Positions 7,129-44,172 of a stretch of 64,000 nt of DNA are shown in pieces (the first letter of the stretch is position 1; each line of letters starts with the position of its first letter). The stretch spans positions 124,001 through 188,000 of the forward strand of contig NIVC01000028.1 in NCBI GenBank assembly GCA_002269645.1, given 5' to 3'. The position numbers and the translations under genes were made by a program. The stretch is from Macrostomum lignano (Eukaryota). The notes beneath the pieces are model-generated. The model was not told where the DNA came from, made no database searches, and saw only the letters and a list, made by a program, of their open reading frames with translations.

Positions 7129-16164
<9,036 letters not shown>

Positions 16165-16969: not shown

Positions 16970-19537
16970 CAAAAAATAGAACGAAAGCAAGTACATGAAA
17001 CCAAAAGCAGTTTGAACATTTTGCAATCTGAAAACATCCAGCAAACCGTGCTCACCCTGTGCGATATTCTCGGATTGTCTCAGTCGACGCGTTACGCAGT
17101 AGCCAGATTATGAGACATGCCCAGCTCTGAGACTGAAAACTTCCAACAGCCAAGACGCCAACTGCGAGATCACGATTTCCAGTTTGGAAGCTGAGGATTC
17201 TGAAGACACGACCGGATCGAATCAAACTCGATATGCCGTGGTGTCTTCATTGCACTCGGTAAAAGTCACCTTCACGGGCTTACCGAATTTAAGCGAGCGA
17301 TTCAGTGCAACTTTTCCCCCAGTGCTCGGTGATCTGTGCAGACTTGTATCGCAACTGATCAAAGTGACTGGAGTCAAGCAGCTCAGGATTCAAGTCGATC
17401 CAAGCACTGCTGAGCGAATACTCCAATCCTCAGTCCAACCGCAGCTGCTTGATGACGTTTCAATCAGGCACTTCCTGTCATCAGCTTTTGTGTTCTGCCA
17501 TCTACTGAGGGTTCCGGGAGAAACCCGTCTCGAGTCACTTTTGGACTTGAATGCTGGCGATGCGCTGGTGACGATCGGAGATCAGCCCCAAAGCTCGATG
17601 AGACTTGCTGTGAGTTCCTGCTTAAACGGAGAAGATGAAGCAGTCAATGAAGAGTTGGAGCACTGCATCGCTGAGAGCTCAAAGCGTTCTACGCCAGTTT
17701 ATCTGTGCATTCTATTCAACGAGATCAGCACGTGCAAATGGTACCTGAGGACCAAAAAAAGAAGTTGAATGTCAACGTAAGCGGTTGCCCAACCATGACG
17801 TGACTCGAATTCGAGTGGAATCGGATTCTGGCCTGAAAATCCGAGTTATTCTATTCGATGTTCAACAAGGAGAATGCTATCAGGACACAGGAGCTCTGCC
17901 AGCGGAACAGGTACTAAACGAGTTCAGCGATGACCAGTTCCTGCGTGAGGCGGTTTCCAAGTATGAGCAGCTGGCTCAGGAGCACTCGTTTCAGCTGGAG
18001 TGCTTCACGGTGCCCTGCCGAAACACCGCTCACATGCTGCAGGCAGCAGCAAAAGTGTAAGACAGTTTTAACAGTGCATAATTATCTGCTTACGTTAGTG
18101 CTGACGCGATGTAGCTCGTACATATCTTGATTCCGCGTCACATTTCAGAGCTCAGGAAGCCCAAAAGCAGAGCGCTGATGCAGCATCTCACGCACATGTA
18201 AGTGGTCACAGAGCAGCACAATGCTTTATTATAGTTGTTATGAAAGGCTTTCAGAACAGAATTTTAAACTGCCCCCAAAATCGCATTCTGTCTGCACGAG
18301 CTATTATTTTATGTAGAAATCAGGAAAAGGGGCGTCGACTTACGCTCATGGAACATCCTTCCTCTTGGTACTCTTGATTGCTACGGTCTTATCCAATAAT
18401 TAGCTTTTACGAGAAAATTACAATAAAGTTTTACTCTCTAAACGTTGTCATGTCAAAATTTCAAAACATTTCAGCTCTTGAGTACACCTATGTCTTTCTC
18501 TAGAGCGAAAGTAAACAGATGAATATATTCCTGTTTAACATTTCAAACTGTTGCTGGCGGTCAGATACTTGTAGCAAAACCCTAACCAGAAAAGAGAGTT
18601 GTATTGAAAATCATAAGATTTTCTGCAGTTTGAGACTGAGGAAGGAGTGTAGGGAGGGATGTTCAAGATATGAAATCTTACAGTAGCTGCCTTATAATTC
18701 AAGCGAAGTTGTACTAGCTGTAATGATCATTAACTATTGCTCAATGCTGCAGTTACTCTATGCCTGATTTACATTTGGAAAGTTAATTTCCACACGAGGC
18801 CAGAACTCTTGCATATAGCTCGAATTTTAAATGAGGCTCGTGCTGAAAACTGCCAGCCATAATAATTTCACCATAGCCAGTTAAAGTACAAAAATTTGAT
18901 ATAAATATGCTTCACAATAAACTTTACAGACTCCCGGAGCTCTGCATCATCTCGCAGCCATCGGAGATGCATCACTGCTCGCTCAAATCCTTGAAGCCGA
19001 TCCGTCAGTGCTGCAACAACCACACAAATCGTTTCCTCATCGCACGGCCCTTCTCTGTGCCGCAGCAGCCTCAGTCGCGGACTTCTCTCAAGGCTCCGAG
19101 GCTCATGCCGAGTGTTTCGAAATCCTCATCAGCAGAGGAGCTGATCCGCAAGCTGCGGACAGCCGGAAGCACTCCGTCTGGCACTGCGCCGTCCTCTCCA
19201 ACAACATTCCTCTGCTAAACACTTTGCTGGCGAACCACAGGGCAGACATCAACAGCGCAGATGGAAGCTGCATGACGCCGTTGCTGCTGGCAGTAGAAGA
19301 GGAGAATGCTCCGGTAGCAGAGATGTTGTTGGACAACGGGGCCAACTCTCAGCTCACTGACAAGGCCGGTCAGTCTGCCCTGACCATGGCTGTTTCTGCT
19401 GGAAACCTGGAGCTGGTGAAGATTGTTCTGAAGCATGAGCCGGAGATTCTGCGTGACAGCGGCGCTGTGAAATACGCCAGCATCTACTGGTCTGCGTGGA
19501 AGCAGGGCTACGATGACATCTGCTTGCATCTTCTGCA
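16970..19537 (+). CDS. Ankyrin-repeat gene, unit 2 (tandem duplicate of unit-1 exons 1-3); two frameshifts as assembled
   Basis: Exons 16970-18056, 18149-18197 and 18930-19537 are homologous to 7129-8214, 8301-8340 and 13344-13951. Frameshifts at ~17108 and ~17757 (A7 run). No ATG; starts at a phase-0 acceptor compatible with exon 16119-16164. Confidence 0.7.
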
Positions 19538-20173
19538 GTGAGTAGAAATTTGAGAAGATCTGCAACAGCTGTTAAACTGCCAAATTTGAATTTTTGTAGA
19601 GCAAAAAGTAGCACGAACTTAGAATATTTTTGGTTCATTTTCACAGTAAAAAGTTATTATACTCGTAGGTTTAACTAATAAGTAATAATTTAGCTTGTAC
19701 AACGTAATTTTTCAGAAAGCTACGAGTTGTTTTTCTTTTATAATTCTAAGTCTACATTAAGTCTACATTATTTTTTGTTCGGGTATTTTTGTTCGGGCGT
19801 CAAGTAAAGTAAATAAGATAAACAAACTAATTAGAGTTTAACACCAAACACAAGCAAGTGGGGCGCAGGGCTCAACCGGGTATATTAATGTCATTAAACT
19901 AGAGGGGGTAAAGTGAAGATAAGAAAAAGAGGGGTGATGTTGGTGTGCAAGGCAAGAGGCGAGATTGAGGAGCCAATCAGAAGGCAGCGAGTGAGAGAGA
20001 GATAGATAAGAATAACAAGACTGAACTAGACAGAGAGGGAGAGAGAAAACAGTAAACAAGATACAAGTGCTGATGAACTAAGAAATGACTAATAAAATTG
20101 CGACAACCAAACTACCAGATTATAAAGATTGTCAATAAGATTCCAATTGATTTTAACTGTCACCTTTAAACAG

Positions 20174-20395
20174 GAGCCGCGAGTGCCAACACCCGACGAA
20201 AAGGCGCGCATCTGGCCGCCGTACAGCGAGCAGATGGAGCAGTTGGGCGACTACCGCAAGCCGGTACACAAGACCGTGTACACTCTAGCTAAGCGAGCTG
20301 ACACACCGCTGCTCAATTGGCATGTTGTGCTCAAGCCAGAGCTGCCGCACGACTACAATGATTCGCCCGACTTCGACTACAAGCTAAAAGAGTAG
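20174..20395 (+). CDS. Orphan terminal (or trans-spliced single) exon, 73 codons
   Basis: Acceptor aaacag| at 20173, open frame EPRVPTPDEK...DFDYKLKE*, GC-rich third codon positions, AATAAA at 20518. Confidence 0.55.
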   Translation, partial: EPRVPTPDEKARIWPPYSEQMEQLGDYRKPVHKTVYTLAKRADTPLLNWHVVLKPELPHDYNDSPDFDYKLKE

Positions 20396-20741: not shown

Positions 20742-23700
20742 GCTGACGCAGAAGAGGCAGCAGCAAGCCTTCAGCCAACCCGCAGTCAGTCGGTTGTGCT
20801 CGTCTGCGACCCAAGCGACATCAGGCAGAGAATTCAGGCTGTTCTTGATTCCGAATCCTGCTATGTCGTTGGGACTCAATCACTTGAGGATGTCGAGAAC
20901 TCTGATAGACTCATTCTGGTTGTGTCGAAAGGACGGTCTTACCAATTTATCGACCATTTTGAGCGTCTTCTCGAGGTAATTGGTTTTGATTATCGTGTGT
21001 TTTTTGGAGTACTCAACATTATTCAGGCCCACACTAGTATCCCGTGTTATTATTGCGCATTCCAGCGAGCCAAAGACTGCAACAAGTGCGTCCTCATTGT
21101 CGAAGCGGAAAATCTTGCGGCAGAAAAGCTGCTAGAAAAAGTCGGACAACGCGAAGATGTCAGAAGAATATCAGCTGAGAACATGGAAGCCGAGTTGCAA
21201 ATATGGCTAAAAAAAGGTAGATAGGATTTACATGTAATTGAGTCTCAGATACTGTATGAACCGTATTGTAAGCAGCAATATTTCAGTAATTTTTATTTTC
21301 ATTTCAGACATTATCTTTGCGCTACCTGTTGGCAATACAGCAGCCAAACAGATGGATGATTTCGATTCGCTTATCAACTTCCTTCTGCACTGGGGATTTC
21401 GCTTGCGCCAACGAGATCTAATTCGCTTTGAATGGAATGACATTTCCGACAAAATGGCTGAGTGTGACAAAGTGATCGTTGTGTACTTCAAGCCACCAGG
21501 AGAAATCTCGAGCCACGCTCGCGGTCATCTGTACCAGATGGCTTTTGACAGGATGATTGCTCTGAGAAAGCCAGTCATGTACATCGTCAAGATGTACGCT
21601 GCCTCTGATGGATCTGACGGAGACACCGTGCTTAAAAACCACCGCATTCAGAGCTTTGTCCGTGCAGTTGGGCCCTGCAGTTTGGGCAAAATTCAAGAAG
21701 ATGTCAAAGCGTGGCTGACTAAAGAGACAGCTCTAGAAGTAAGCAAAAGTATGGTATTTGGGAGCCTTGGAAATGGTCTTGCTTGGCAGTATGCCACAGG
21801 TTTCTTGGCATATATTTTGCCTAATATCGGCAAGGTTTTGAGAGACCAAGTAACTGAGAGAAATCCTAATGACACTAGCCTCTTAAAAGCAGAATTGCTC
21901 GATCAATGTGGTCTTGGCAGCATTGATCAAAACAAAATATTCGTTTTGAAGAAGTACTTTGTGCTACTGAAGGAGGACGACATCGACAGTGACAGTCATG
22001 TGAAGCCAAATCCGGAGAGTCTTTCTGCTTCATGTTGCAAGATTCAACGCACACTGAGTGAACAGCCTATAACATTAGAGTTTGAAAGTCCAGGTTATTC
22101 CAAAACAATTCCTCTCTACCTTGTCAAATTTGGTGAAGAATTGAATATCCCTCAGTTTGAGCGCTACAGCCACGCAATAATCTTGGGAGGCTTCGCCCCT
22201 CCAGTCACAGTCATTCGCGAGCTTCGAGGAATAAAAGATTTAGATGTTTCAGAAGAAATGCTGCATAATGCCTACAAGCTCTTCAAGGAAGAGTTGCAGT
22301 TCATTTTGAACCACCCCAAAGCAAACGAGCTGCTTGCAAAATTCGGTTCTGTAGACGTCCTGCCTGACAAGTCTGCGAACAAGTCTGACAAAGCAGCTTG
22401 TATTGTTGAGCGTAAGAAGGGGGAGTCTGAGGATAACTGGGATAAACTCTTTCTTTCCCGCATCAAGGAGGAAATTTTTAATGATCGCCGCAATGAACCT
22501 ATCCGATCGATTGATAATCATCATCAAGTGGACAGTGACGTTTTAGTTGTCAAGTTTTCAAGGTCAGTCGAAGAGCTTCACGATGCTGTCGTCGAAAGGC
22601 TCGAGCAAGAAGAAGGCTTTCGTGTAGAAAATTTCCAGCTGTTAAACCACACGTTTGCCGAAGTTCTCGTCAAATGCCGGCGAATGATTTTGTTTGCATC
22701 TCTCCAAGACTTGGAGTGTTTCAACAAGGATTACAGCAGCTTTGACTACAGTGATAAAAAGCACAACCACTTGCTTCGAGACATGACATCAGCTGTGACT
22801 TACGTAAGTTTTCGTTTCTATAAGTGATAACGTTTCATCGTTTTATCATATAAAACTAATTGGTCAATTTCAGATTCACATGCGTCAGGAGTACAATCTG
22901 GTGGTCGTTGTCATCACCCAAAATGTCAATAAAGACATCTACAGCGTCCTACCGTCTTCATTGCAAATTCTTCCTGAGAATAATGTTGTGTCCATCCTAA
23001 ATCTAACAAACGACAGATTAGACAATATTCAGTTTGCTTTCTCCAAGGGCGAATCAAGGCATTGTTCATTCCACGAATTAATTGAACGTCTAAGTAAGGT
23101 TTTTTTGAGTACTTTTAAGTTTCTCTATTAATTAGTGAAACTTGGTCATAATGTTTTATAAGTATTTTACTGTCTACAATTGACAATTTTAGATCTTAGA
23201 GATCCTACTATCGGGGTCGATGAAAACCTTCCTCTGATGTCCATGGCTTATTCAATGGCTGCAAACTCCTGCTTTGGATTTGTTCATCATTTGGTTCAAC
23301 GTAAGTCTTAGTTTGTCGGCGGCAGTTGCAGCTACGGTACTGTGGCTCACCACCATATCAGTTACACTCCAATTCGGTGCGTGAAAATGATTTTTTAACA
23401 AAATTGCCTGAATCTTTACCCAGGTGAACAAGCCGGCAGACTGCCGTTCAAGCTGCCTTACAAGTACGTTGTACCACGCAGTGCGCGGTATCCTGAGTAT
23501 TCCGAACTGCAAGAGCAGCTCAGTAAGCTGGGAATCACTTTGAAGAAAGACAAGTTTCAAAGCGAGGGCAGAGAATATCAGTTCTGCTTGTACACTAGGA
23601 AGTTAAACTCGCGAGAGCTAAGCGTGGCCTTTGAGGTGCCGCTGTGCGTGCTGAACCTTCGCAAGCAAGCCAAGAGCGGCTTCGGAGGCGTGCGTCGGAC

Positions 23701-23923
23701 GAGACTGAAGCAGAATCTTGACGAGTACATCATGGCATTCAAGACCATGCTTGAGTGCATGGACTGGCAGAAATTCGTTCAAGTGCTGGTCTGGCCTGAC
23801 GACAAATTTCCTGTCGACACTTGGCGCCATCCGACGCGCGAGTACGCAGAGAGCCTGCTGGACCTCGTATTCGCTGATGTCGAAGCTGAACATGCCGATG
23901 TGGCAAATCTTCGCTTGGAGTAA
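20742..23923 (+). CDS. TIR-like x3 / STING cyclic-dinucleotide-binding domain x2 protein (TM-less tandem TIR-STING), ~932 aa
   Basis: Exons 20742-21216, 21308-22803, 22874-23093, 23193-23300 and 23424-23923 splice in frame (2799 nt, no internal stop). STING signatures: GNGLAWQYATGFLAYILP (cf. human HGLAWSYYIGYLRLILP) and, in copy 2, MAYSMAANSCFGF, GREYQFCLY, VAFEVPL, GFGGVRRTRLKQ. TIR-like motifs: DVENSDRLILVVS, WGFRLRQRD...ECDKVIVVY, RLEQEEGFRV...KCRRMILFAS. Confidence 0.8.
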
Positions 23924-28484: not shown

Positions 28485-28825
28485 GAGCTTGGAGTCAGTT
28501 TGAAGAAAACTCGAACAGATATTACAGTTTCTGTTGTTACACACCAAAGGCAAATTTGCGCGGAGAGCTAAGCGTGGCTTTTGATGTGCCGGTGTGCGTG
28601 CTGAACCTTCGCGGGCAAGCCAATAGCTGCGTTGGAAACGTGTGTCGGACGAGGCTGAAGCAGAACCTTGACGAGTACATCATGGAATTCAAGACTATGC
28701 TGGAGTGCATGGACTGGCAGAACTTCGTTCAAGTGCTGGACTGGTCTGACGACAAGTTTCCTGTCGACACTTGGCGCCATCCCACGCGCGAGAGGGCCTT
28801 CATGACCTCGTCTTTGCTGAGATTC
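28485..28825 (+). pseudogene. Decayed copy of the last (STING CBD2) exon of the TIR-STING gene
   Basis: ELSVAFDVPVCVLNLRGQ...RTRLKQNLDEYIMEFKTMLECMDWQNFVQVLDWSDDKFPVDTWRHPTRE aligns with 23610-23835. There is a frameshift upstream and a 7-nt deletion near 28792, after which EGLHDLVFAEI matches ESLLDLVFADV. Confidence 0.85.
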
Positions 28826-29049: not shown

Positions 29050-29725
29050 GGCAGGTGGCAGGCAGCTGCAGCAGGTCAGGTGGCAGGCAGCTGCAGCAGG
29101 TCAGGTGGCAGGCAGATGCAGCAGGTCAGGTGGCAGGCAGATGCAGCAGGTCAGGTGGCAGGCAGATGCAGCAGGTCAGGTGGCAGGCAGATGCAGCAGG
29201 TCAGGTGGCAGGCAGATGCAGCAGGTCAGGTGGCAGGCAGCTGCAGCAGGTCAGGTGGCAGGCAGCTGCAGCAGGTCAGGTGGCAGGCAGATGCAGCAGG
29301 TCAGGTGGCAGGCAGATGCAGCAGGTCAGGTGGCAGGCAGATGCAGCAGGTCAGGTGGCAGGCAGATGCAGCAGGTCAGGTGGCAGGCAGATGCAGCAGG
29401 TCAGGTGGCAGGCAGATGCAGCAGGTCAGGTGGCAGGCAGATGCAGCAGGTCAGGTGGCAGGCAGATGCAGCAGGTCAGGTGGCAGGCAGATGCAGCAGG
29501 TCAGGTGGCAGGCAGATGCAGCAGGTCAGGTGGCAGGCAGATGCAGCAGGTCAGGTGGCAGGCAGATGCAGCAGGTCAGGTGGCAGGCAGATGCAGCAGG
29601 TCAGGTGGCAGGCAGCTGCAGCAGGTCAGGTGGCAGGCAGATGCAGCAGGTCAGGTGGCAGGCAGCTGCAGCAGGTCAGGTGGCAGGCAGATGCAGCAGG
29701 TCAGGTGGCAGGCAGATGCAGCAGG
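29050..29725. repeat. 25-bp minisatellite (GCAGGTCAGGTGGCAGGCAGATGCA) x ~27
   Basis: Tandem copies, preceded by a CCGG/TTCCGG-rich low-complexity tract at 28840-29045. Confidence 0.95.
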
Positions 29726-30011
29726 AATTCGGGCCGCATCCAGGCGCCGCAGTCCCAGAGAAGTCCCAGAGAGGAACAGTGAGCTGAGCGACCACCCCAA
29801 GCCTAGCCGATACAATGAGGTGCAGAAAGGGCAGTCAGTAAGGAGGCACGAGCTGCTCAGAGCCCCTGCTATTAAATAATTAAGAGACATTAACTAGCAA
29901 TCTGCTCGACAGTTGTGAAGGCAACTAAGAAATGAAAAAATGGAATAAACTACTCGCATGTTTTGACCTTTTAAAACATTTTACAGCTGGGTGGACTGAA
30001 TTGCAATGCAG

Positions 30012-31570: not shown

Positions 31571-34500
31571 TCATTCAGTCTTGCTCTCCCCAAAGCCCCC
31601 TTCGTTGTCAGTCCGCTCGTGAACTCCATCAGCAGCTGAGGCACCATCAGCAGCTGAGGCCCCATCAGCAGCTGAAGCCCCATCGGCAGCAGCCCCATCA
31701 GAAGCTGAGGCCCCATCAGCAGCGGCTGAGAACTTCACATCCGGCAGCTCCAGGCTGTGCGCCAAGGCGCGGCCGCTGGTCTCGATGGGCAGCAGCACGC
31801 AGAGCCCAGCACAGCTGAGATCCACCATCAGGTAGATGATGAAGGCCAGCAGCACGCTCACATCCGGCATGATCACCTGGGCAACAAATGGCGTTGTCAT
31901 GGAGCCCAGGCGAGCCATGGCTGAGCAGATGCCCAGCCCGAGACTGCGAATCACCGTGGGGTACACCTGGATTGGAAAGCCGCTTTTGACATCACTGGGT
32001 GTGGTGGACAGCCCTGCAGTCTCACCGACCCTTCCAGTTTCTAACTTAGTAAGCTGCAGCAGTGGGCCGATATAAGCCAAACGGCGTGCTCCAAGTCTGC
32101 ACCAAGCTTGTCGCAATGTCTGCTCTCGCAATGTCCTGATCTCAAATCCATCTACCTTCTCTCCTATCAACCCTGTACCCCGTCTAACCTCTCTTCTATA
32201 CCCCTTCCTCCCTTCTACGACTCTGCTGTCTACCCCTCTCTGCTGTCTACCCTCTCTCCTGTCTCCCCCTCTCTCCTGTCTACCCCTCTCTCATGCCTAC
32301 TTCTCTCCTATCCACCCTCTCTCCTGTCTCCACCTCTCTCCTGTCTACCCATCTCTTCTGTCTACCTCTCTCTCCTGTCTACCCCTCTCTCCAGTCTACC
32401 TCTCTCTCCTGTCTACCTTTTTCTCCTGTCTCTCTTCTCGCTGCTTTCTAACCATCCCATCTTCCTCCTTCTGCCTTTTCCATCTAAAAAGCCGGAAACA
32501 AATGAGAAAATTCATTAATAACTTCGCATTCAGCTCAAACCGCACTACTCACCTCAGTAGTATAAATATAAATAGTATTGAATATGCCAGCAGAGTGGGC
32601 CCTGATCAGAAACAGAAAAGCGGTGGTGGCCGCCTTCGGCACGCACAGGTAGGTGAGGCCGAAGAACACGCCAGTGAGCAGGTAGTTGATGCCGAGGGTG
32701 GCCCGCCTGCCCAGGGCATCGATGGTGAGCATGTTCACCGGAATGATGACGAACTCTCCAAGTGAGGAGATCAGCATGGCTGTGTAATCGTCCGACTGCA
32801 GACCTCTGCAGCAGGAGTTGTCCACCACGGACTCCGTGGTGTTGTGGGCCACCGTAACCGACTGAGCGGTGCTGAAGCAGTCCTGGTGGAAGCGAAAGAT
32901 TTCAGTGCTCACCAGCACGATGCCGTAGTAGGAGAAGGCGACACCGAACCACAGGGAGAACAGGATGAAGCTGGTGCGGCGGTAGAACGGGTGGAAGAGC
33001 GCCTTGAGCTGCCCTCGGTCTGACTGCGGGAGGGTCAGGCAATCAGTCAGTCAGTCAGTCAAGTCAGTCAGTCAGTCAGTCAGTCAGTCAGTCAGTCAGT
33101 CAGTCAGTCACCCACTCACTCAAGTCAGTCAGTCAGTCAGTCAGTCAGTCAGTCAGTCAGTCAGTCAGTCAGTCAGTCAGTCAGTCAGTCAGTCAGTCAG
33201 TCAGTCAGTCAGTCAGTCAGTCAGTCAGTCAGTCAGTCAGTCAGTCAGTCAGTCAGTCAGTCAGTCAGTCAGTCAGTCAGTCAGTCAGTCAGTCAGTCAG
33301 TCAGTCAGTCAGTCAGTCAGTCAGTCAGTCAGTCAGTCAGTCAGTCAGTCAGTCAGTCAGTCAGTCAGTCAGTCAGTCAGTCAGTCAGTCAGTCAGTCAC
33401 CCACTCACTCAAGTCAGTCAGTCAGTCAGTCAGTCAGTCAGTCAGTCAGTCAGTCACCCACTCACTCAAGTCAGTCAGTCAGTCAGTCAGTCAGTCAGTC
33501 AGTCAGTCAGTCAGTCAGTCAGTCAGTCAGTCAGTCAGTCAGTCAGTCAGTCAGTCAGTCATTCAGTCAGTCAGTCACCCACTCACTCAAGTCAGTCAGT
33601 CAGTCAGTCAGTCAGTCAGTCAGTCAGTCAGTCAGTCAGTCAGTCAGTCACCCACTCACTCAAGTCAGTCAGTCAGTCAGTCAGTCAGTCAGTCAGTCAG
33701 TCAGTCAGTCAGTCAGTCAGTCAGTCAGTCGCTCACCTCGCTGACGGTGGCCACAGCAGGCAGGCCCTCCATCGCAGGCCTGCGGTTCTCCCTGGCGATC
33801 TGGTCAATGACGGCAGCCGCTTCCTCAGCGCGTCCTGAGGCCAGCAGGAACCTCGCAGACTCCGGCAGGTGCTGAGGAAGAAAAGAGACAGATGATGCAG
33901 CTCAGGCTACTCACCCCAAGCGTGAGCACACAGATGCAGCTCAGGCTACTCACCCCAAGCGTGAGCACACAGATGCAGCTCAGGCTACTCACCCCCAGAG
34001 TGAGCACACACAGATAGCTCAGGCTACTCACCCCAAGCGTGAGCACACACAGATAGCTCAGGCTACTCACCCCAAGCGTGAGCACACAGATGCAGCTCAG
34101 GCTACTCACCCCCAGAGTGAGCACACACAGATGCAGCTCAGGCTACTCATCCCCAGCGTGAGCACTCACAGATGCAGCTCAGGCTACTCACCCCAGCGTG
34201 AGCACACACAGATGCAGCTCAGGCTACTCACCCCCAGCGTGAGCACACACAGATGCAGCTCAGGCTACTCACCCCCAGCGTCAGCATGAACAGAAACAGC
34301 GGCAGTGAAGAGAAGGCCACCAGGTATCTCCAGCCCAAAGTGGGCAGCACCAGGTAAGCCAGCAGGATCTCGAAGGTGGATCCAAGACCCCAGAACAGGT
34401 TGTACAGGATTAGCACCTTGGCGCGGTGCTGCTGAGGCAGGTACTCGGACAGCAGGGTGAAGGAGGAGGCCGCACCGCCGATGTTGAAGCCCACGACACC

Positions 34501-37500
34501 ACGCAGGCTGACGAGCCAGAAGTAGTCAGGCGCGAACGAGCAGAGCAGGCCGAAGTAGGCCATGAGGCAGAGGCTGAGGGCGAACACGCTCCAGCGACCT
34601 CGCTTGTCTGACACGGCGCCCCAGCCAGGAGCTCCGAGCAGCATCCCAGCGAACACCACAGTGGTGATGCCGGCCACCTCGGTTGACGTCAGGCGCCAGT
34701 CGCAGCGGAGCGCGGGGCCCAGCACTGACAGCAGCAGCATCTCCATTGCGTCCGCTGCCTGCATTGAAATTGCAAAATGCCAGCTGCACTACTGACAGTC
34801 CGTGCGGCAGTAGCAATGTGCGAATATCGAGGCAATACTTGTGACATGGGATCAGAGAGCAGTGCTCAAATGGGATCAGAGAGCAGTGCTCAAATGGGAT
34901 CAGAGAGCAGTGCTCAAATGGGATCAGAGAGCAGTGCTCAAATGGGATCACAGAGCAGTGCTCAAATGGGATCAGAGAGCAGTGCTCAAATGGGATCACA
35001 GAGCAGTGCTCAAATGGCATCAGAGAGCAGTGCTCAAATGGGATCAGAGAGCAGTGCTCAAATGGGATCAGAGAGCAGTGCTCAAATGGGATCAGAGAGC
35101 AGTGCTCAAATGGCATCAGAGAGCAGTGCTCAACTGGGATCAGAGAGCAGTGCTCATATGGGATCAGAGAGCAGTGCTCAAATGGGATCAGAGAGCAGTG
35201 CTCAAATGGGATCAGAGAGCAGTGCTCAAATGGGATCAGAGAGCAGTACTCAAATGGGATCACAGAGCAGTGCTCAAGACTCCGCAAAAGCAGCAACCTA
35301 CAGACATGATGCCGGTGATGCAGAGGATTTTAATCTGGAACCTGCCGAACCCCAGCTTCTCAACCGCCTCCTCCACGGTGTACCGAACCTGCCGCTCGCC
35401 CTGAGAACTGTCGCTGCCTGCAGCAGCTGATGCAGCACCGGATGCTGAGCCAGAACTCAGCAGAACTCTGGCATCTGAAATCGAGAAGAGTGCATCAATG
35501 CAAATCGAGCTGTCAATCAAAATGACGCGCCAAGTTGAATGAGAAAATGCAAGGCACCCTGTTGAGTTGCTGAGTAGCTTTTTGAGCTTGCTGCGGCGGC
35601 TGCCAGACTCTGTCTACTAGAAGAAGAATAAGAGCTGCCGCGCTGCATTGCTGCAGCTGAGCAGTCAGTCAGCGCTCGGGCAGTTGAGGCAGGAATTGCT
35701 GAGGGTAGATTTCTGAGCAGCGCTGCTCAGGCCTCTGATAAATAAAATTTGACACGGCTGACTTGGCGCTGCCGCTTCCGGCTCAAGGAGCAGCGGGAGG
35801 AGAGGCGGCAGGGAGGGCTGGGGAGGGGATTTGAAGTGTGGGAAATTCCGGTGGGAGCGGACCGAGGCTGCTTCACCAGCGATTTAGCCTTGAAATGGGA
35901 TTTGTGGTCGGTGGGAATTCTGTGCAGTGGGGATCTAAGGGGAGTCAATGAGGATCAGGGATGGTGAATGAGGATCAGGGAGCGTGAATGAGAATCAGGG
36001 AGAGTAAATGAGGATCAGGGAGGGTGAATGAGAATCAGGGAGGGTGAATGAGGATCAGGGAGGGTGAATGAGAATCAGGGAGGGTGAATGAGAATCAGGG
36101 AGGGTGAATGAGGATCAGGGAGGGTGAATTAGAATCAGGGAGGGTGAATGGGGATCAGGGATGGTGAATGGGGATCAGGGATGATGAATGAGAATCAGGG
36201 AGGGTGAATGAGAATCAAAGAGGGTGAATGGGGATCAGGGAGGGTGAATGGGGATCAGGGAGGGTGAATGAGGATCAGGGAGAGTGAATGAGGGTCAGGG
36301 AGCGTGAATGAGGATCAGGGATGGTGAATGAGGATCAGGGAGCGTGAATGAGGATCAGGGATGGTGAATGAGGATCAAGGAGAGTGAATGAGAATCAGAG
36401 AGGGTGAATTGGGATCAGGGAGCGTGAGTGAGGATCAGGGAGGGTGAATGAGAATCAAAGAGGGTGATTGAGAATCAGAGGGTGAATTGGGATCAGAGAG
36501 GATGAATGGGGATCAAAGCCACAAAGTCCCCAAGGATCAGGTGACTCAGAGCCACCCCGGGCCAAATGCCTCAAGCAGCTGCAAGCACGACAGCACGCGA
36601 CCTACTTTTGGCTCGCGCCCGCGCGGCAGGGGAGGCGGCGACGATGAGCGACGGCGTAGCGGTGGCGACCCGAGGCTGCCGGCGAGGAGATGCAGCCCTG
36701 CTGAGATCACCTGGAAATGTTTGGCAGGAGCAGAAATGCTCTGAAACATTTGGCAGAAGCAGAAATGCCCTGAAACATTTAGCAGAAGCAGAAATGCCCT
36801 GAAACATTTGGCAGAAGCAGAAATGCCCTGAAACATTTAGCAGAACCAGAAATGCCCTGAAACATTTGGCAGAAGCAGAAATGCCCTGAAACATTTGGCA
36901 GAAGCAGAAATGCTCTGAAACATTTGGCAGGAGCAGAAATGCCCTAAAACATTTGGCAGAAGCAGAAATGCCCTGAAACATTTAGCAGAAGCAGAAATGC
37001 CCTAAAACATTTAGCAGAAGCAGAAATGCCCTAAAACATTTGGCAGAAGCAGAAATGCCCTGAAGCATTTGGCAGAAGCAGAAATGCCCTGAAACATTTA
37101 GCAGAAGCAGAAATGCTCTGAAACATTTGGCAGAAGCAGAAATGCCCTGAAACATTTGGCAGAAGCAGAAATGCCCTGAAACATTTGGCAGAAGCAGAAA
37201 TGCCCTGAAACATTTAGCAGAAGCAGAAATGCTCTGAAACATTTGGCAGAAGCAGAAATGCCCTGAAACATTTGGCAGAAGCAGAAATGCCCTGAAACAT
37301 TTGGCAGAAGCAGAAATGCCCTGAAACATTTGGCAGAAGCAGAAATGCCCTGAAACATTTGGCAGAAGCAGAAATTCCCTGAAACATTTGGCAGAACCAG
37401 AAATGCCCTGAAACATTTGGCAGAAGCAGAAATTCCCTGAAACATTTAGCAGAAGCAGAAATGCCCTGAAACATTTGGCAGAAGCAGAAATGTCCTAAAA

Positions 37501-38257
37501 CATTGGCAGAAGCAGAAATGCCCTGAAACATTTGGCAGAAGCAGAAATGCCCTGAAACATTTAGCAGAAGCAGAAATGCCCTGAAACATTTGGCAGAAGC
37601 AGAAATGCTCTGAAACATTTGGCAGAAGCAGAAATGCCCTGAAACATTTGGCAGAAGCAGAAATGCCCTGAAACATTTAGCAGAAGCAGAAATGCCCTGA
37701 AACATTTGGCAGAAGCAGAAATGCCCTGAAACATTTGGCAGAAGCAGAAATGCCCTGAAACATTTGGCAGAAGCAGAAATGCCCTGAAACATTTGGCAAA
37801 AGCAGAAATGCCCTGAAACATTTGGCAGAAGCAGAAATGCCCTGAAACATTTGGCAGAATCAGAGACCCTGCTCAGATCCCTGGCAGAAGCAGAAACAAC
37901 AAGCAGCCAAGAAGGAACACCCGCTGCTTTTCTCTACCCCTCTGCCCGCCCCAAAAATTTCTGCTCCCAGGCAATAAAAGCAGCAGAACCAGCCGATAAG
38001 CCGAAAAGATCGCTAATCAATACTGCACTGCTTTTTGAGAACAATCCGAGGCGCTGAGACCATAGCGGCCGAGTAGCTCAGTTGGTTAGAGCGTCGTGCT
38101 GATAACGCGAAGGTCGAGGGTTCGAGCCCCTCCCCGGCCAGGCAATTTTTTGTATTTTCTGCCCGATTAATTTTTCTGAGTACAGAAACTCACCATCTGC
38201 ATCCAGCGAGTCATCTTCCAGCCTGTAGCGACTGCGCCTGATGAAGCTGACAGACAT
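31571..38257 (-). CDS. SVOP: SVOP-like (synaptic vesicle 2-related) MFS transporter, ~574 aa
   Basis: Exons 38257-38194, 35474-35302, 34758-34273, 33871-33737, 33023-32553 and 31966-31571 splice in frame (1725 nt). Motifs: [66 protein letters not shown] possible alternative first exon is 35648-35558. Confidence 0.88.
33043..33730. repeat. Compound (TCAG)n microsatellite with TCACCCACTCACTCAAG interruptions
   Basis: Fills almost the whole SVOP-like intron 33736-33024. Confidence 0.95.
33890..34272. repeat. ~40-41-bp minisatellite containing the exon end and the 5' splice site
   Basis: About 10 copies of (minus strand) ctcacgctggggGTGAGTagcctgagctgcatctgtgtgtg. Confidence 0.9.
34845..35278. 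repeat. 24-bp minisatellite (GGGATCAGAGAGCAGTGCTCAAAT) x ~18
   Basis: Intronic; contains the palindrome GAGCA-G-TGCTC. Confidence 0.95.
35940..36510. repeat. 20-bp minisatellite (GAATGAGGATCAGGGAGGGT)
   Basis: Tandem, moderately diverged copies. Confidence 0.9.
36715..37860. repeat. 29-bp minisatellite (GCAGAAGCAGAAATGCCCTGAAACATTTG) x ~39
   Basis: Tandem copies; the overlapping ORFs are artefacts. Confidence 0.95.
38067..38140 (+). tRNA. tRNA-Ile, anticodon GAT
   Basis: 74-nt cloverleaf: GGCCGAG/CCCGGCC acceptor stem (one A-C mismatch), D arm GCTC/GAGC, anticodon arm TCGTG-CTGATAA-CGCGA, T arm GAGGG-TTCGAGC-CCCTC, discriminator A. T6 Pol III terminator at 38146-38151. Confidence 0.88.
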
Positions 38258-39058: not shown

Positions 39059-40194
39059 TGAGCACACAGCTGCTGAAATGACATTGGAAACAAGCAGAGC
39101 TCATCGCCCACCTGAGCCTCTCTGGAACTCCAAACCAGCTCACTTTCCGTAGCGAAGGCCTCATTTTATTTTTCATTAAAAAACAAACAATTTGAAAAAA
39201 ACAAAAGTTCAAATGTTGTTGGGGCTAATTATAAATATTCAGTACACAATATAAGCTAATTAAACTATGCACTCTGCAAAAACTGGGTGTCTCAGGTGCA
39301 CCAGAGAAACCAGAAAGTACACACTGTACTTTATCTCTTGAACCAGTTAGTCAGGGCACCAGGTGAGAGCAATTAACAAATGAATTAGAATTAACAAAAA
39401 CAGCCATTAGGCAGCTCCAGAATGCCTAGCACTGCAGAGCCACAGAAACTGAGAGATGGGGCACAAAATCCAGGTGCTGTAAAGTCAGCCTGTAAAAGTG
39501 CACACTGTAAGCCAGAAGTTAAAAATTTAATTAAAAACTTCAACACACAATATGATTCACTATTTATTCACTAATAAGTACCAAAGCAATAAAGTTGAAT
39601 TTATGAATAGGCACAAACTCGCAATAGATACTACTAAGGCCAGTAGGCAGTGAAAATGTATACAATAAGCGCTAAATATACTAATAAAAATCCTTCCAAG
39701 GCTGAGCACTGCTAATCTGTCTGTGTACGAAGCTCGCTTGAGAGACTGGGATCAGAAATTCCAACAGTTGCTGGCGGCAAACTTCAAAGACAATCAATTA
39801 GTGCGGGACAGACAGTTTTGAGGCAAATATCAGTTTGTACTTTTAGGCACCAGGTGATTGGCAGGTGGCAGTTCGATGGGGGCAGTAAAACATTAAAAGT
39901 TGGGAAAAATTCTGTGAAAATTTGTAATAAATTTTAGCCTCAGGGGAAATTCAGGCACTGAAGTATCTTTGCTCACAGAATCTGACAATAAAAACTTGGG
40001 GATGAAAGCTGATACACTGTGCTAGCAACAGAGAATCAACAAGTACTCAGTGTACTTTACAAGGAACCCGACAGCTTGCTGGTTGAGAATTTGGTTCTGC
40101 TGACAAACAAAAAAACAAACAAATAGCTTTACACAGGTGCTGCTGGTTTTACAGTGTTAGGGATTGTGCTGGGGAGAGAGGAGAGTAAGGAGAG

Positions 40195-41062
40195 GCTGAG
40201 GCGGGGAGAGGGGGCAGATCAGGCGGGGATAGGGGGAAGATGCGGGGAGAGGGGGCAGAGGCGGGGAGAGGGGGAAGATCAGGCGGGGAGAGGGGGCAGA
40301 GGCGGGGAGAGGGGCAGAGGCGGGGAGAGGGGGCAGAGGCGGGGAGAGGGGGCAGAGGCGGGGAGAGGGGGAAGATCAGGCGGGGAGAGGGGGCAGAGGC
40401 GGGGAGAGGGGGCAGAGGCGGGGAGAGGGGGCAGAGGCGGGAAGAGGGGGCAGAGGCGGGAAGAGGGGGCAGAGGCGGGGAGAGGGGGCAGAGGCGGGGA
40501 GAGGGGCAGAGGCGGGGAGAGGGGCAGAGGCGGGGAGAGGGGGAAGATCAGGCGGGGAGAGGGGACAGAGGCGGAGAGAGGGGGCAGAGGCGGGGAGAGG
40601 GGGCAGAGGCGGGAAGAGGGGGCAGAGGCGGGGAGAGGGGCAGAGGCGGGGAGAGGGGCAGAGGCGGGGAGAGGGGCAGAGGCGGGGAGAGGGGGCAGAG
40701 GCGGGGAGAGTGGCAGAGGCGGGGAGAGGGGGCAGAGGCGGGGAGAGGGGGCAGAGGCGGGGAGAGGGGGCAGAGGCGGGGAGAGGGGGGAGAGGCGGGG
40801 GAGAGGGGACAGAGGCGGGGAGAGGGGGCAGAGGCGGGGAGAGGGGGTAGAGGCGGGGAGAGGGGGCAGAGGCGGGGAGAAGGGGCAGAGGCGGGTAGAG
40901 GGGGCAGAGGCGGGGAGAGGGGGCAGAGGCAGGGAGAGGGGACAGAGGCGGGAGAGGGGGCAGAGGCGGGGAGAGGGGACAGAGGCGGGGAGAGGGGGCA
41001 GAGGCGGGGAGAGGGGGCAGAGGCGGGGAGAGGGGGCAGAGGCGGGGAGAGGGGCAGAGGCA
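40195..41062. repeat. ~20-bp G-rich minisatellite (GGCGGGGAGAGGGGGCAGAG)
   Basis: Tandem copies with G4-5 runs. Confidence 0.95.
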
Positions 41063-41854
41063 GTAAGAGCCCTGCACTGCAGATGCTGCATTTCCCAAAT
41101 CACCAAGCCATTCATGCTGTCTCAAGTAAGCCAAAGTAAGGCACTAAACTGACTGGATTAGTTAATCATCACTACTACTACAAGTAGGCACTGAACACTG
41201 AACCTGTGACAGTTCATATACTAAGCTAAAATTCATCCACTGCTCTCCATACAACTACCTAGCGAATGCAGAGATGGCACTCAGCTATAAACCACATCAC
41301 TGCATGCCTTGGCACGCAATACTCAGTCTGAATTTGCACGCATCATCAGATCGGGGATGCATATTTATTTAATATTTATATTTGCATTCATCTTGCAATT
41401 GCAAAAGAAAATTTATACCAGCGCGGGTTTCTTGAACAGCGATTCACATTTATGAATACAGAAAATTTACAGATTTGGGGTTGCACAAAAACAGGGAAAA
41501 ACAGTAAGAGACAGACAGACAGGCAGAAGCTGAAATTCGATCAAGTGTACTTCTGGCTCTGGGGATAAATTGGGATATTAATGCGCTCTCAGTGCCGCCT
41601 TGCAAATAGTTGTTATACAGAAGCTCGATCAGTTGAAAACAGTATAGAATAAATACCCGCAACTTGCTACTACTAACTGGCCAAGCGAGTAGTATTTGCT
41701 TACATTAAAAATCACACAGTTTATTTGCTAAGCTGACGCAGGGCCGATCGGCTTGAGAAATGAGTTTTTTATGAGAGACTGAAAACAGGACGCTGGCTCT
41801 CTGGGTGACAGCGGCTCGGGTTCTGCTGGCTGGATAAGCTCGCTTGAGACTGGG

Positions 41855-43635: not shown

Positions 43636-44172
43636 AGAAAAGACGAGGTATCAACGTAAATCTCGGAGACCTGCGCTGCCAAAAGATGAGCAAACGAAAA
43701 GAAAAAAAACACGAAAAACAAAATGAAAAGAAGAAAAACTATAAAAGATGAAATATTAAATTAGTAAGTTAATAAGCTCGCTTTGCTGTTGACATAACTT
43801 CCAAAAAAATTAGTTTAAACTATATAAACATACGCTAAACATGACAGTGTATGTGTTGTGTCTGTCTGTGTGGACTGTCCGCTACACACCTTCGCGCTGT
43901 GAGTTTCTACAGACACTGCATGCCATGTGGCAGCAGCAGCAACAGGTAAAGAACGGTTCTACAATACAAGTATGAAAACTGTGAACAATAGCAGACATAA
44001 TAGCGGTTGACACACGAGTTGAAAATCCAGCATTTGGGCATTTATAATTGTGTATAGATTATATATAATAATATAAATATAAAATCAGCATTGGTAATAA
44101 TAAAAAACAGCTTTGTACAGTCAAGGACAGAAAGCGAAGCTCGATTTCAGGTGAAACTATTCGGTAATTTTA

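What the first reader, a model, noticed from the sequence alone, without database searches (positions are those of the whole stretch)
21770..23720. The two STING domains have lost complementary halves of the ligand-binding signature
By-eye alignment to human STING. CBD1 keeps the dimer helix almost intact (GLAW-x-Y163...G166-F167...ILP) but lacks the lid Arg/Tyr (PGYSKTIPLY where R238-V-Y240 is expected) and has GGFAPP where E260-Y-A-T263-P264 is expected. CBD2 has a degenerate dimer helix (W161 and Y163 lost, G166-F167 kept) but keeps R-E-Y-x4-Y (R238, Y240, Y245). Inference: the two domains may form an obligate asymmetric pocket suited to an asymmetric or non-canonical nucleotide signal, or one may be a pseudo-receptor that acts as scaffold or inhibitor.
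Basis: partly seen in the sequence, partly recalled or inferred. Interest (0 to 1): 0.75.

Follow-up and report, generated by a model that had tools for sequence, protein, structure and literature searches.

The report
Flatworm protein with two STING domains
A gene of the flatworm Macrostomum lignano (or a very close relative) encodes a soluble immune-type protein with two very different STING sensor domains: the first keeps only the pairing helix, while the second keeps the three residues that all known STINGs use to grip their nucleotide signal.

Summary
All the quoted motifs are at the stated coordinates. They lie in one six-exon gene (20742-23923, + strand; 902 codons, 5' end open). Its layout is TIR-like, TIR-like, STING-1, TIR-like, STING-2, with no membrane helix.

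- **STING-1 (CBD1):** a STING domain by profile-profile comparison (hhalign E 4e-5, 142 columns). AlphaFold could not fold it.
- **STING-2 (CBD2):** no significant sequence similarity to STING. It folds confidently (pLDDT about 80), and Foldseek matches it with its preceding domain to oyster and bacterial TIR-STING (E 1e-8).
- **"Complementary halves" is overstated.** CBD2 keeps the universal STING triad: helix aromatic F730, lid R786 and lid Y788. It also has an invariant pocket-facing Glu. CBD1 keeps the dimer helix and F294 but replaces every polar contact with another motif that is itself conserved.
- **Family:** three paralog groups, found only in M. lignano and clustered in tandem. All keep both domain types.
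- **Window copy:** 43 nonsynonymous to 9 synonymous changes on its own branch, clustered in the CBD2 lid.

Bivalves are already recorded as having proteins with two STING and two TIR domains. An asymmetric pocket formed within one chain remains possible but untested.

The parts
20742..23923 (+). Whole gene as modelled. Exons: 20742-20975, 21066-21216, 21308-22803, 22874-23093, 23193-23300, 23424-23923 (stop TAA). 902 codons. The 5' end is open: exon 1 begins at an acceptor (cag|GCT) with no in-frame ATG.
   Evidence: All introns are GT-AG. The same six-exon structure in loci L001 and L002 reproduces the database proteins P0001 and P0002 exactly. The window protein is 94% and 88% identical to them.
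20790..21215 (+). TIR-like domain 1 (aa 17-128; spans the intron 20976-21065). Present only in this paralog group.
   Evidence: Alternating strand/helix pattern aligns with the other TIR-like domains. No Pfam hit. Fold not modelled.
21216..21726 (+). TIR-like domain 2 (aa 129-268; spans the intron 21217-21307). It is the domain directly before CBD1 and is present in all three paralog groups.
   Evidence: Alignment A8. No Pfam hit. Fold not modelled.
21748..22485 (+). STING-type domain 1 (CBD1, aa 276-521).
   Evidence: hhalign against a STING profile: E 4.1e-5, 142 columns. PDB profile search: all 60 sequences shown are STING. AlphaFold models have low confidence (pLDDT 47-50) and Foldseek found nothing.
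21775..21822 (+). CBD1 helix alpha1, GLAWQYATGFLAYILP. This is the canonical dimer-helix motif. Q289 stands at S162 and F294 at Y167.
   Evidence: AWQ...GFL...LP is invariant in all paralogs.
22075..22122 (+). CBD1 lid-hairpin equivalent, LEFESPGYSKTIPLYL. It has no Arg. The family motif is LEF[ED]SPG[YF]xK, with K394 invariant.
   Evidence: The register relative to R238/Y240 is ambiguous: hhalign puts T395 at R238, while an internal alignment to CBD2 puts Y392 at R238 and K394 at Y240.
22186..22203 (+). CBD1 GGFAPP, at the position of E260-Y-A-T263-P264 (G423 at E260, P426 at T263, P427 at P264).
   Evidence: HMMER and hhalign agree. G-[FY]-A-x-P is conserved in all paralogs.
22522..23197 (+). 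TIR-like domain 3 (aa 534-702; spans the introns 22804-22873 and 23094-23192). An invariant D-L-E (aa 596-598, 22708-22716) sits at the start of the helix after strand C.
   Evidence: Foldseek aligns 402 columns to oyster TIR-STING 6wt7 and about 350 columns to bacterial TIR-STING 9lmq, which is more than a STING domain alone. pLDDT is 45-65. No sequence hit to TIR. D-L-E is invariant in A7.
23213..23920 (+). STING-type domain 2 (CBD2, aa 708-902; spans the intron 23301-23423).
   Evidence: AlphaFold pLDDT about 80, with the STING element order a1-b1-a2-b2-b3-b4-a3-a3'-b5-a4. Foldseek: 163 PDB matches at E<=0.001, and all top 50 are STING.
23228..23281 (+). CBD2 helix alpha1, LPLMSMAYSMAANSCFGF. 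Small residues stand where W161 and Y163 are expected. N725 stands at S162 and G729-F730 at G166-Y167.
   Evidence: LPLxSMxxxMAANxxxGF is invariant in all paralogs. Helix in the model.
23567..23599 (+). CBD2 start of strand beta3, GREYQFCLYTR. R786 stands at R238 and Y788 at Y240. R795 replaces a Trp that is invariant in every other copy.
   Evidence: GRx[YF]xF is invariant. The distance from the Arg to the end of the strand is 12 residues, as I recall it for human STING (for the model). W795R is a change on the window branch.
23627..23644 (+). CBD2 AFEVPL, at the end of strand beta4. E807 is invariant and in register to face the pocket, either at E260 (hhalign) or at A262 (if P809 is aligned to P264). 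V808 or L810 stands at T263.
23666..23695 (+). CBD2 QAKSGFGGVR. The family-invariant motif is QAxxxxGG[VI]R, in the alpha3-alpha3' loop. It is colinear with the human STING AGFS loop.
   Evidence: Its role is not known.
28499..28798 (+). Orphan relic of the last CBD2 exon (75% amino-acid identity to aa 782-878). No upstream exons accompany it.
   Evidence: tblastn. A similar relic lies in L002 at 17362-17535.

Best explanation
The region encodes the two ligand-binding-type domains of a soluble, multi-domain TIR-STING-type immune protein (TIR-like, TIR-like, STING-1, TIR-like, STING-2). It belongs to a small, fast-evolving, tandemly clustered family found only in Macrostomum lignano.

Shown:
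- The gene model.
- STING homology of CBD1 by profile comparison.
- The STING fold of CBD2, and the TIR-STING-like arrangement of TIR-like domain 3 with CBD2.
- Conservation of both domain types in all paralog groups.

Inferred:
- CBD2 with its preceding TIR-like domain is the signal-sensing module. It keeps the helix aromatic (F730), lid Arg (R786), lid aromatic (Y788), an Asn at S162 and an invariant pocket-facing Glu (E807). It probably binds a cyclic-dinucleotide-like ligand.
- CBD1 keeps the canonical dimer helix and the stacking Phe but none of the polar contacts, so it does not bind a canonical cyclic dinucleotide. It serves as a pairing or oligomerisation partner for CBD2, either in trans or in cis.
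- Ligand binding drives higher-order assembly that brings the TIR-like domains together as the output, as in bacterial TIR-STING.
For: - Gene model and organism.
- No membrane helix: the highest Kyte-Doolittle mean over 19 residues is 1.15.
- CBD1 is STING-related: with negative controls.
- CBD2 fold, and the match of TIR-like domain 3 plus CBD2 to 6wt7 and 9lmq.
- Li et al. name the helix aromatic, lid aromatic and lid Arg as shared by all known STINGs (PMC9980059). CBD2 has all three and they are conserved across paralogs as G-F and G-R-x-[YF]. CBD1 has only the first.
- Both domain-specific motif sets survive at about 30% identity in three paralog groups.
- The P0001-P0002 comparison shows purifying selection on CBD1 (dN/dS 0.28) and CBD2 (0.50).
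- Bacterial TIR-STING works by ligand-induced filament formation that activates the TIR domain (PMC9402430).
- TIR-like domain 3 has an invariant Glu at the start of the helix after strand C, where TIR NADases carry their catalytic Glu.
Against: - There are no binding or assembly data.
- The residue equivalences for CBD2 rest on a predicted model and on a sequence alignment no better than the controls.
- CBD2 lacks equivalents of T263 and R232.
- The CBD1 fold could not be confirmed.
- The conserved G-[YF]-x-K and G-[FY]-A-x-P motifs of CBD1 could form a ligand site of their own.
- Most platyhelminths are reported to lack cGLR enzymes (PMC9980059), so the source of any cyclic dinucleotide is unknown.
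- No TIR sequence signature is detectable.
- The window copy itself shows no purifying selection on its own branch and has lost an otherwise invariant Trp (W795R).
Confidence: 0.5

Rival explanations
1. Single-chain pseudo-dimer. CBD1 and CBD2 pack helix-on-helix within one polypeptide and form one asymmetric pocket per chain. It would have two stacking Phe, one Arg/Tyr lid from CBD2 and one Tyr/Phe-x-Lys lid from CBD1. Such a pocket would suit an asymmetric or non-canonical nucleotide.
For: - The two domain types always occur together and in the same order in all three paralog groups.
- Group B (P0004) joins them with only about 22 residues and no middle domain.
- The CBD1 helix is bulky (AWQYxxGF), while the CBD2 helix has invariant small residues at the same positions (MAANxxxGF). 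That pattern would suit heterotypic packing.
- Precedent from my own knowledge: SAVED domains are fused CARF-like halves that read asymmetric oligonucleotides.
Against: - The two-domain AlphaFold model gave no confident inter-domain packing (pTM 0.39, CBD1 below pLDDT 50).
- CBD2 has a complete universal contact set and structurally resembles homodimeric TIR-STINGs.
- In groups A and C a 170-residue domain separates the two STING domains.
- No covariation test is possible with three lineages.
Confidence: 0.25
2. Two independent receptors in one chain. Each domain homodimerises in trans and binds its own ligand. CBD1 uses its alternative conserved motif for a non-cyclic-dinucleotide ligand, so the protein integrates two signals or cross-links into networks.
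For: - The replacement residues in CBD1 are conserved, not random: K394, G423 and F294 are invariant, and position 392 is aromatic.
- CBD1 is under purifying selection between P0001 and P0002 (dN/dS 0.28).
- CBD1 keeps the canonical homodimer helix.
Against: - CBD1 lacks the lid Arg and lid aromatic in the arrangement described as universal for STING ligand binding.
- Gly-Gly stands at the E260 position.
- There is no structural model of the CBD1 pocket.
Confidence: 0.15
3. Copy-level rival. The family is functional, but this window copy is a redundant paralog drifting towards loss. Its particular residues, such as R-E-Y, would then carry little functional meaning.
For: - The window branch has 43 nonsynonymous to 9 synonymous codon changes, against 54:46 on the P0002 branch (Fisher p = 6e-4). 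The ratio is indistinguishable from neutral (p = 0.23).
- Radical changes occur at conserved sites (W795R, W65R, D859V).
- The neighbouring group-B gene present in L001 and L002 is missing here.
Against: - The 902-codon reading frame is open, and all four indels relative to P0001 are in frame.
- Splice sites are intact.
- The universal contact residues and all family-invariant pocket motifs except W795 are kept.
- Eight of the 12 CBD2 changes cluster in the lid hairpin (p = 4e-4, chosen post hoc). That pattern looks more like diversifying selection on a binding surface.
Confidence: 0.2
4. Artefact. One of the two regions is not a STING domain at all: either a chance helix motif in CBD1, or an AlphaFold model of CBD2 pulled towards a known fold.
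For: - CBD1 scores below the Pfam cut-off (18 bits against 27) and its fold is unconfirmed.
- CBD2 has no significant sequence signal.
Against: - The CBD1 hhalign alignment covers 142 colinear columns, including the LYILLP, EYATP and alpha3' regions, at E 4e-5.
- CBD2 has pLDDT about 80 from the family's own alignment, without templates. Foldseek probability is 1.00 for more than 50 STING structures from animals and bacteria.
Confidence: 0.05

Closest known systems
Metazoan TIR-STING fusion of the oyster Crassostrea gigas (PDB 6wt6/6wt7)
   Same: A soluble protein with a TIR-type domain directly N-terminal to a STING ligand-binding domain. It is the best Foldseek match of the TIR-like domain 3 plus CBD2 model (E 1.7e-8, 402 aligned columns). 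The CBD1 helix also matches its helix by sequence.
   Different: Sequence identity is only about 12%. The flatworm TIR-like domains have no detectable TIR sequence signature. The flatworm protein has a second, degenerate STING domain and extra TIR-like domains. The oyster protein is a homodimer solved with 2'3'-cGAMP bound (title of PDB entry 6wt7).
[quoted passage not shown]
   Same: The same kind of architecture, a tandem repeat of TIR and STING units without a transmembrane domain.
   Different: These are known only from domain annotation. Whether their two STING domains are unequal has not been described in what I could read. The flatworm domains are too diverged for Pfam to call.
Bacterial TIR-STING (Sphingobacterium faecium; PDB 9lmq and PMC9402430)
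   Same: The second-best structural match (E 5.6e-8, about 350 columns). It has a compact STING domain with a stacking Phe and a lid Arg. It provides the mechanism proposed here: ligand binding leads to filament formation and TIR activation.
   Different: It has one STING domain per chain and forms a symmetric homodimer that binds c-di-GMP. Its TIR domain is a proven NADase with catalytic Glu E84. No relative of CBD2 was found in bacterial genomes.
Canonical transmembrane STING (human, Nematostella, coral)
   Same: The CBD1 helix motif GLAWxYxxG[YF]LxxILP, and colinear similarity through to helix alpha3'. The CBD2 fold has TM-score about 0.6 to the ligand-binding domains.
   Different: The flatworm protein has no 4-helix membrane domain and no C-terminal tail motif. 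CBD1 lacks R232, R238, Y240, E260 and T263. CBD2 lacks W161, Y163, R232 and T263.
SAVED domains of CBASS effectors (functional analogy only; from my own knowledge)
   Same: Two homologous ligand-binding halves fused in one chain, so that the pocket need not be symmetric.
   Different: An unrelated fold (CARF-like). For the flatworm protein, cis pairing is only a hypothesis.

Membership tests
STING ligand-binding domain (Pfam PF15009 and solved STING structures) | Significant match to the family sequence profile | tested here: inconclusive
   CBD1: Pfam 18 bits against a cut-off of 27, E 0.002, helix only. hhalign against a 19-sequence STING profile gives E 4.1e-5 and probability 70% over 142 columns; controls give E 0.09-0.56. 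CBD2: no Pfam or PDB hit, and hhalign E 0.07 is at control level.
STING ligand-binding domain (Pfam PF15009 and solved STING structures) | STING alpha/beta fold (a1-b1-a2-b2-b3-b4-a3-b5-a4) | tested here: met
   Met for CBD2: pLDDT about 80 with the right element order. Foldseek gives 163 PDB hits at E<=0.001, all top 50 are STING, and TM-score to the target is 0.57-0.66. Not confirmed for CBD1: pLDDT 47-50 and no Foldseek hit.
STING ligand-binding domain (Pfam PF15009 and solved STING structures) | Dimer-helix motif GLAWSYYxGYLxxxLP | tested here: met
   Met for CBD1 (GLAWQYATGFLAYILP, 21775-21822). Not met for CBD2, which keeps only G729-F730.
STING ligand-binding domain (Pfam PF15009 and solved STING structures) | Universal ligand contacts: helix stacking aromatic, lid aromatic, lid Arg (PMC9980059) | tested here: inconclusive
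   CBD2 has F730, Y788 (Y/Y/F across paralogs) and R786 (invariant) at the expected positions of the model, but the alignment is not statistically secured. CBD1 has only F294. Its lid has no Arg and carries G-[YF]-x-K instead.
STING ligand-binding domain (Pfam PF15009 and solved STING structures) | Homodimer that binds a cyclic dinucleotide | not testable with these tools
   Needs protein biochemistry or multimer/ligand structure prediction.
Canonical transmembrane STING | N-terminal four-helix membrane domain | tested here: not met
   No segment reaches a Kyte-Doolittle mean of 1.6 over 19 residues (maximum 1.15). The N-terminal part consists of TIR-like alpha/beta domains. [quoted passage not shown]
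TIR-STING fusion proteins (oyster, bacteria) | TIR-fold domain directly N-terminal to the STING domain | tested here: met
   At fold level only. Foldseek aligns 402 columns to 6wt7 and 348-361 columns to 9lmq chains, against about 180 columns for STING domains alone. The model confidence for TIR-like domain 3 is moderate (pLDDT 45-65). No TIR or SEFIR sequence match was found.
TIR-STING fusion proteins (oyster, bacteria) | Catalytic Glu in helix C of the TIR domain and NADase activity | tested here: inconclusive
   D-L-E (aa 596-598) is invariant at the start of the helix after strand C in TIR-like domain 3, which is the expected place. No residue-level structural alignment and no enzyme assay were possible.
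TIR-STING fusion proteins (oyster, bacteria) | Ligand-induced filament formation | not testable with these tools
   Needs experiment.
Bivalve double TIR-STING proteins | Two STING and two TIR domains in one chain without a membrane domain | tested here: met
   The architecture matches the description in PMC11103948. Common descent with the bivalve genes was not tested.

The most novel reading that the evidence does not exclude
The two unequal STING domains pair within one chain into a pseudo-heterodimer with a single asymmetric pocket. This would be a STING counterpart of the SAVED principle. It would let a flatworm lineage that may lack ordinary cGLR enzymes read an asymmetric, possibly non-cyclic-dinucleotide signal and answer through TIR-like domains.
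Probability: 0.2. Interest if true: 0.8.

Novelty: new variant of a known kind. Interest (0 to 1): 0.55.

Why it matters
- **A gap in the phylogeny.** Flatworms are usually listed among animals without cGAS-STING. STING is reported absent from Schistosoma, and most platyhelminths are reported to lack cGLRs. Here a free-living flatworm carries a private, clustered and rapidly changing family of soluble STING-type proteins. It is so diverged that one domain is visible only to profile methods and the other only to structure prediction.
- **A natural experiment on the STING pocket.** The family keeps two unequal STING domains side by side. This shows which parts of the pocket and dimer interface can be separated.
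- **If cis pairing is real.** It would show how a symmetric receptor becomes an asymmetric one.
- **A warning for surveys.** Surveys of STING across animals based on Pfam will miss such genes.

Tried and rejected
- **Pfam on all domains.** Only the CBD1 helix scored, and below the cut-off. There was no TIR, SEFIR, Death or Prok_STING hit, even for paralogs that UniRef names that way.
- **PDB sequence searches.** Single sequences and profiles found nothing for CBD2 or TIR-like domain 3.
- **hhalign of CBD1 against CBD2, and of TIR-like domain 3 against domain 2.** No similarity.
- **hhalign of CBD2 against STING.** The alignment is colinear, but its score equals that of a negative control. I do not use it as evidence of homology.
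- **AlphaFold on CBD1.** Low confidence both alone and in the two-domain construct. Foldseek on the CBD1 model gave only noise.
- **Search for more family members.**
  - A full HMMER scan of 1.84 billion representatives found only three clusters, all from M. lignano.
  - The word-indexed search with the widened alignment added nothing.
  - Scans of bacterial genomes, IMG/VR and JGI metagenomes for CBD2 found nothing.
- **Start codon.** I found none in frame in exon 1 and no consistent upstream exon. The likeliest explanation is SL trans-splicing at the 20742 acceptor, 347 bp after the MRPS34 stop. That spacing fits the operon criteria for this species. Whether the leader supplies the AUG is my recollection and was not checked.
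- **Upstream exons.** I considered whether the ANK-repeat exon (18910-19541) or the MRPS34 exon belong to the gene. I rejected this because MRPS34 ends in a stop, and in L001 and L002 they are called as separate genes.
- **Gene conversion from the 28.5 kb relic.** I considered it as the source of the lid changes and rejected it, because the variant residues differ.


Full report
**What is at the coordinates**

The window is eukaryotic DNA. The long open frame 21238-22827 and the frames after it belong to one gene on the + strand. Its closest database relatives are two "hypothetical proteins" of the flatworm Macrostomum lignano. By BLASTP, P0001 is 91% and P0002 84% identical to the first, shorter model. 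In the alignment of the final 902-residue model they are 94% and 88% identical.

I modelled six exons with GT-AG introns: 20742-20975, 21066-21216, 21308-22803, 22874-23093, 23193-23300 and 23424-23923. They give 902 codons. The same exon structure, applied to the two M. lignano loci L001 and L002 (assembly GCA_002269645.1), reproduces P0001 and P0002 exactly. That supports the model.

The 5' end is open. Exon 1 starts at a splice acceptor and has no in-frame ATG, and the database proteins are also marked partial. The acceptor lies 347 bp after the stop of an MRPS34 gene. That spacing fits the criteria for operons and spliced-leader trans-splicing in this species (PMC8629364).

**Architecture**

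The protein has no membrane helix. It consists of five parts:
- two alpha/beta domains that look TIR-like (aa 17-128 and 129-268);
- CBD1 (aa 276-521);
- a third TIR-like domain (aa 534-702);
- CBD2 (aa 708-902).

Pfam recognises none of the TIR-like domains.

**Is CBD1 a STING domain?**

With single sequences, only the helix GLAWQYATGFLAYILP matches. Pfam STING_LBD scores 18 bits against a cut-off of 27, and the match to PDB STING chains is about 13 bits.

After I found diverged paralogs (see the family section), the evidence improved:
- A five-sequence CBD1 profile hit 69 PDB sequences; all 60 shown are STING.
- hhalign against a profile of 19 deuterostome STINGs gave E 4.1e-5 and probability 70% over 142 colinear columns. 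The alignment runs through KYFVLL (LYILLP in human), GFAPP (EYATP) and the following helices.
- Controls with the TIR-like domains gave E 0.09 and 0.56.

It was validated by a 100% match to a PDB-derived entry and by its residue numbering.

AlphaFold did not fold CBD1 with confidence, either alone or in a larger construct (pLDDT 47-50). Foldseek on that model returned noise. CBD1 is therefore a STING homologue by sequence profile, but its fold is unconfirmed.

**Is CBD2 a STING domain?**

Sequence methods say nothing here. There is no Pfam or PDB hit, and the hhalign score is no better than the controls.

The AlphaFold model of the segment from CBD1 to the C-terminus gave pLDDT about 80 for CBD2. 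It was built from the family's own seven-row alignment without templates. The order of elements was a1-b1-a2-b2-b3-b4-a3-a3'-b5-a4.

Foldseek against the PDB found 163 matches at E<=0.001, and all top 50 are STING:
- oyster TIR-STING 6wt7 was first (E 1.7e-8, 402 aligned columns);
- bacterial TIR-STING 9lmq came next (5.6e-8, about 350 columns);
- then came human, rat, anemone and coral ligand-binding domains (TM-score to target 0.57-0.66).

The long alignments to the two TIR-STING structures show that the preceding domain is TIR-like in fold. They also show that TIR-like domain 3 plus CBD2 form a TIR-STING unit. The CBD1 part of that model was unfolded, and the CBD1-only model gave no hits. 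The matches must therefore come from TIR-like domain 3 and CBD2.

**Which contact residues are kept?**

CBD1, by hhalign and HMMER:

| CBD1 residue | Human STING position |
|---|---|
| Q289 | S162 |
| F294 | Y167 |
| G423 | E260 |
| P426 | T263 |
| P427 | P264 |

- The CBD1 lid hairpin (LEFESPGYSKTIPLYL) contains no Arg.
- Its register is ambiguous. hhalign places T395 at R238 and leaves Y240 in a gap. An internal alignment to CBD2, anchored on the hairpin Gly, places Y392 at R238 and K394 at Y240.

CBD2, from the element positions in the model and the colinear alignment:

| CBD2 residue | Human STING position |
|---|---|
| N725 | S162 |
| G729-F730 | G166-Y167 |
| R786 | R238 |
| Y788 | Y240 |

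- The 12 residues from R786 to the end of the strand equal the human R238-E249 span as I recall that strand (own knowledge).
- The hairpin tip is about ten residues shorter than in human STING by that same recollection, so there is no R232 equivalent.
- E807 is invariant. It is either at E260 (hhalign) or two residues later (if P809 is aligned with P264). In both registers it faces the same side of the strand as E260.
- T263 is replaced by a hydrophobic residue in both registers.

Li et al. state that a helix aromatic, a lid aromatic and a lid Arg are shared by all known bacterial and animal STINGs (PMC9980059). CBD2 has all three, and CBD1 has one. The two domains have therefore lost different things, but they are not complementary halves. 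CBD2 looks like a plausible receptor, and CBD1 looks like a degenerate partner that kept the pairing helix.

**The family**

A full HMMER scan of 1.84 billion representative proteins found only three clusters, all from M. lignano:
- the window type;
- group B (P0004, 582 aa: TIR-like, CBD1, about 22 residues, CBD2);
- group C (P0010, 712 aa: TIR-like, CBD1, TIR-like, CBD2).

Other points about the family:
- Some members carry automatic UniRef names such as "Stimulator of interferon genes protein".
- At about 30% identity, all groups keep both domain types and their separate motif sets.
  - CBD1 type: AWQxxxGFLxxxLP, KYFxLL, LEFxSPG[YF]xK, HAxxxxG[FY]AxP.
  - CBD2 type: LPLxSMxxxMAANxxxGF, PYxxVxPxS, GRx[YF]xF, AFE[VI]P, QAxxxxGG[VI]R.
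- CBD1 and CBD2 have no detectable similarity to each other.
- No relative of CBD2 exists in the bacterial, viral or metagenome collections scanned.
- In L001 and L002 a group-B gene lies 6-7 kb downstream of the group-A gene. The window has only a relic of a CBD2 exon there (28499-28798).

**Selection**

Between P0001 and P0002, dN/dS is 0.36 overall, 0.28 in CBD1 and 0.50 in CBD2.

The window copy is different:
- Its own branch carries 43 nonsynonymous and 9 synonymous codon changes, against 54:46 on the P0002 branch (Fisher p = 6e-4). The ratio is not distinguishable from neutral (p = 0.23).
- In CBD2 the count is 12:1. Eight of the 12 lie in the lid stretch aa 774-810 (p = 4e-4, a region chosen post hoc).
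- These include N787E and R789Q next to the Arg and Tyr, and W795R at a Trp invariant in all other copies.
- All four indels relative to P0001 are in frame, and the reading frame is open.

This may be diversifying selection on a binding surface or early decay of a redundant copy. I cannot decide between them.

**How it most likely works**

- *Shown:* domain identities and architecture as described above.
- *Established for relatives:* bacterial TIR-STING binds c-di-GMP as a homodimer, assembles into filaments and thereby activates its TIR NADase, whose catalytic Glu lies in helix C (PMC9402430). Oyster TIR-STING has been solved with 2'3'-cGAMP bound (PDB 6wt7).
- *Inferred for this protein:* CBD2 senses a cyclic-dinucleotide-like ligand. 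CBD1 contributes pairing or oligomerisation through its canonical helix. The TIR-like domains are the output. TIR-like domain 3 has an invariant D-L-E at the start of the helix after strand C, the expected site of a catalytic Glu.

The cis pseudo-dimer with one asymmetric pocket remains possible:
- the domain order is fixed;
- group B has only a short linker;
- the CBD1 helix is bulky, and the CBD2 helix has small residues at the same positions.

No tool available here could test it. The source of a ligand is also open, since most platyhelminths are reported to lack cGLRs.

**Comparison with what is known**

- Soluble TIR-STING fusions are known from oysters and bacteria.
[quoted passage not shown] The architecture is therefore not new in kind.
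- In the library searched I found no description of STING in Macrostomum or of unequal tandem STING domains.
- STING is described as absent from the flatworm Schistosoma mansoni (PMC10855445).

I therefore rate this a new variant of a known kind, of moderate interest. The asymmetric-pocket reading is the more exciting possibility but is unproven.

Noticed in passing
window 28499-28798 (+); L002 17362-17535: An orphan relic of the last CBD2 exon (75% amino-acid identity to aa 782-878 of the gene). It has no upstream exons and diverges after RHPTRE. A similar relic sits between the group-A and group-B genes in locus L002, so the partial duplication predates the split of these loci.
   Followed up: partly
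window 8824-12795 (+): Ty1/copia-type LTR retroelement with intact-looking ORFs: gag (8824-9426), protease/integrase (9505-11376) and reverse transcriptase (11398-12795).
   Followed up: partly
window 7129-8218 and 13338-13955 versus 17184-17768 and 18910-19541: A segmental duplication flanks the retroelement. The ankyrin-repeat exon and an upstream exon both occur twice, with near-identical translations.
   Followed up: no
window 20129-20395 (+) and acceptor at 20742: The last exon of an MRPS34-like gene ends 347 bp before exon 1 of the STING-type gene. This is operon-like spacing for M. lignano. A UniRef model (P0003) fuses the two genes and skips parts of both STING domains.
   Followed up: partly
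L001 20074-21698 and 22809-23243; L002 20597-21907; absent from window 23924-64000: In the two database loci a group-B tandem-STING gene (89-93% identical to P0004) lies 6-7 kb downstream, and L001 has the start of a further copy. The window has no such gene in the 40 kb downstream.
   Followed up: partly
window 21308-22803 (exon 3), between aa 380 and 381, and aa 312-315: Relative to P0001 and P0002, the window copy lacks a 23-residue low-complexity insert in CBD1 (PVMTSNSSPADNEELCAPPQHCA). It has an extra ERNP after the dimer helix. Groups B and C also lack the 23-residue insert.
   Followed up: partly
dS by domain among window, L001 and L002 copies: Synonymous divergence is mosaic. It is 0.27-0.28 in TIR-like domain 3 between P0002 and the other two copies, but about 0.05 in CBD2 and the N-terminal domains. 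This suggests gene conversion between the copies.
   Followed up: no
window 44173-45216 (-) and 34228-34764 (-): An HMG-box protein ORF and an exon of a major-facilitator transporter. Both are unrelated to the finding.
   Followed up: no
window 29055-29879, 33004-33744, 36571-37792, 40154-43751: Long tandem or low-complexity tracts. The 42-44 kb tract is extremely purine-rich on the + strand (GC skew 0.88, AT skew 0.78).
   Followed up: no
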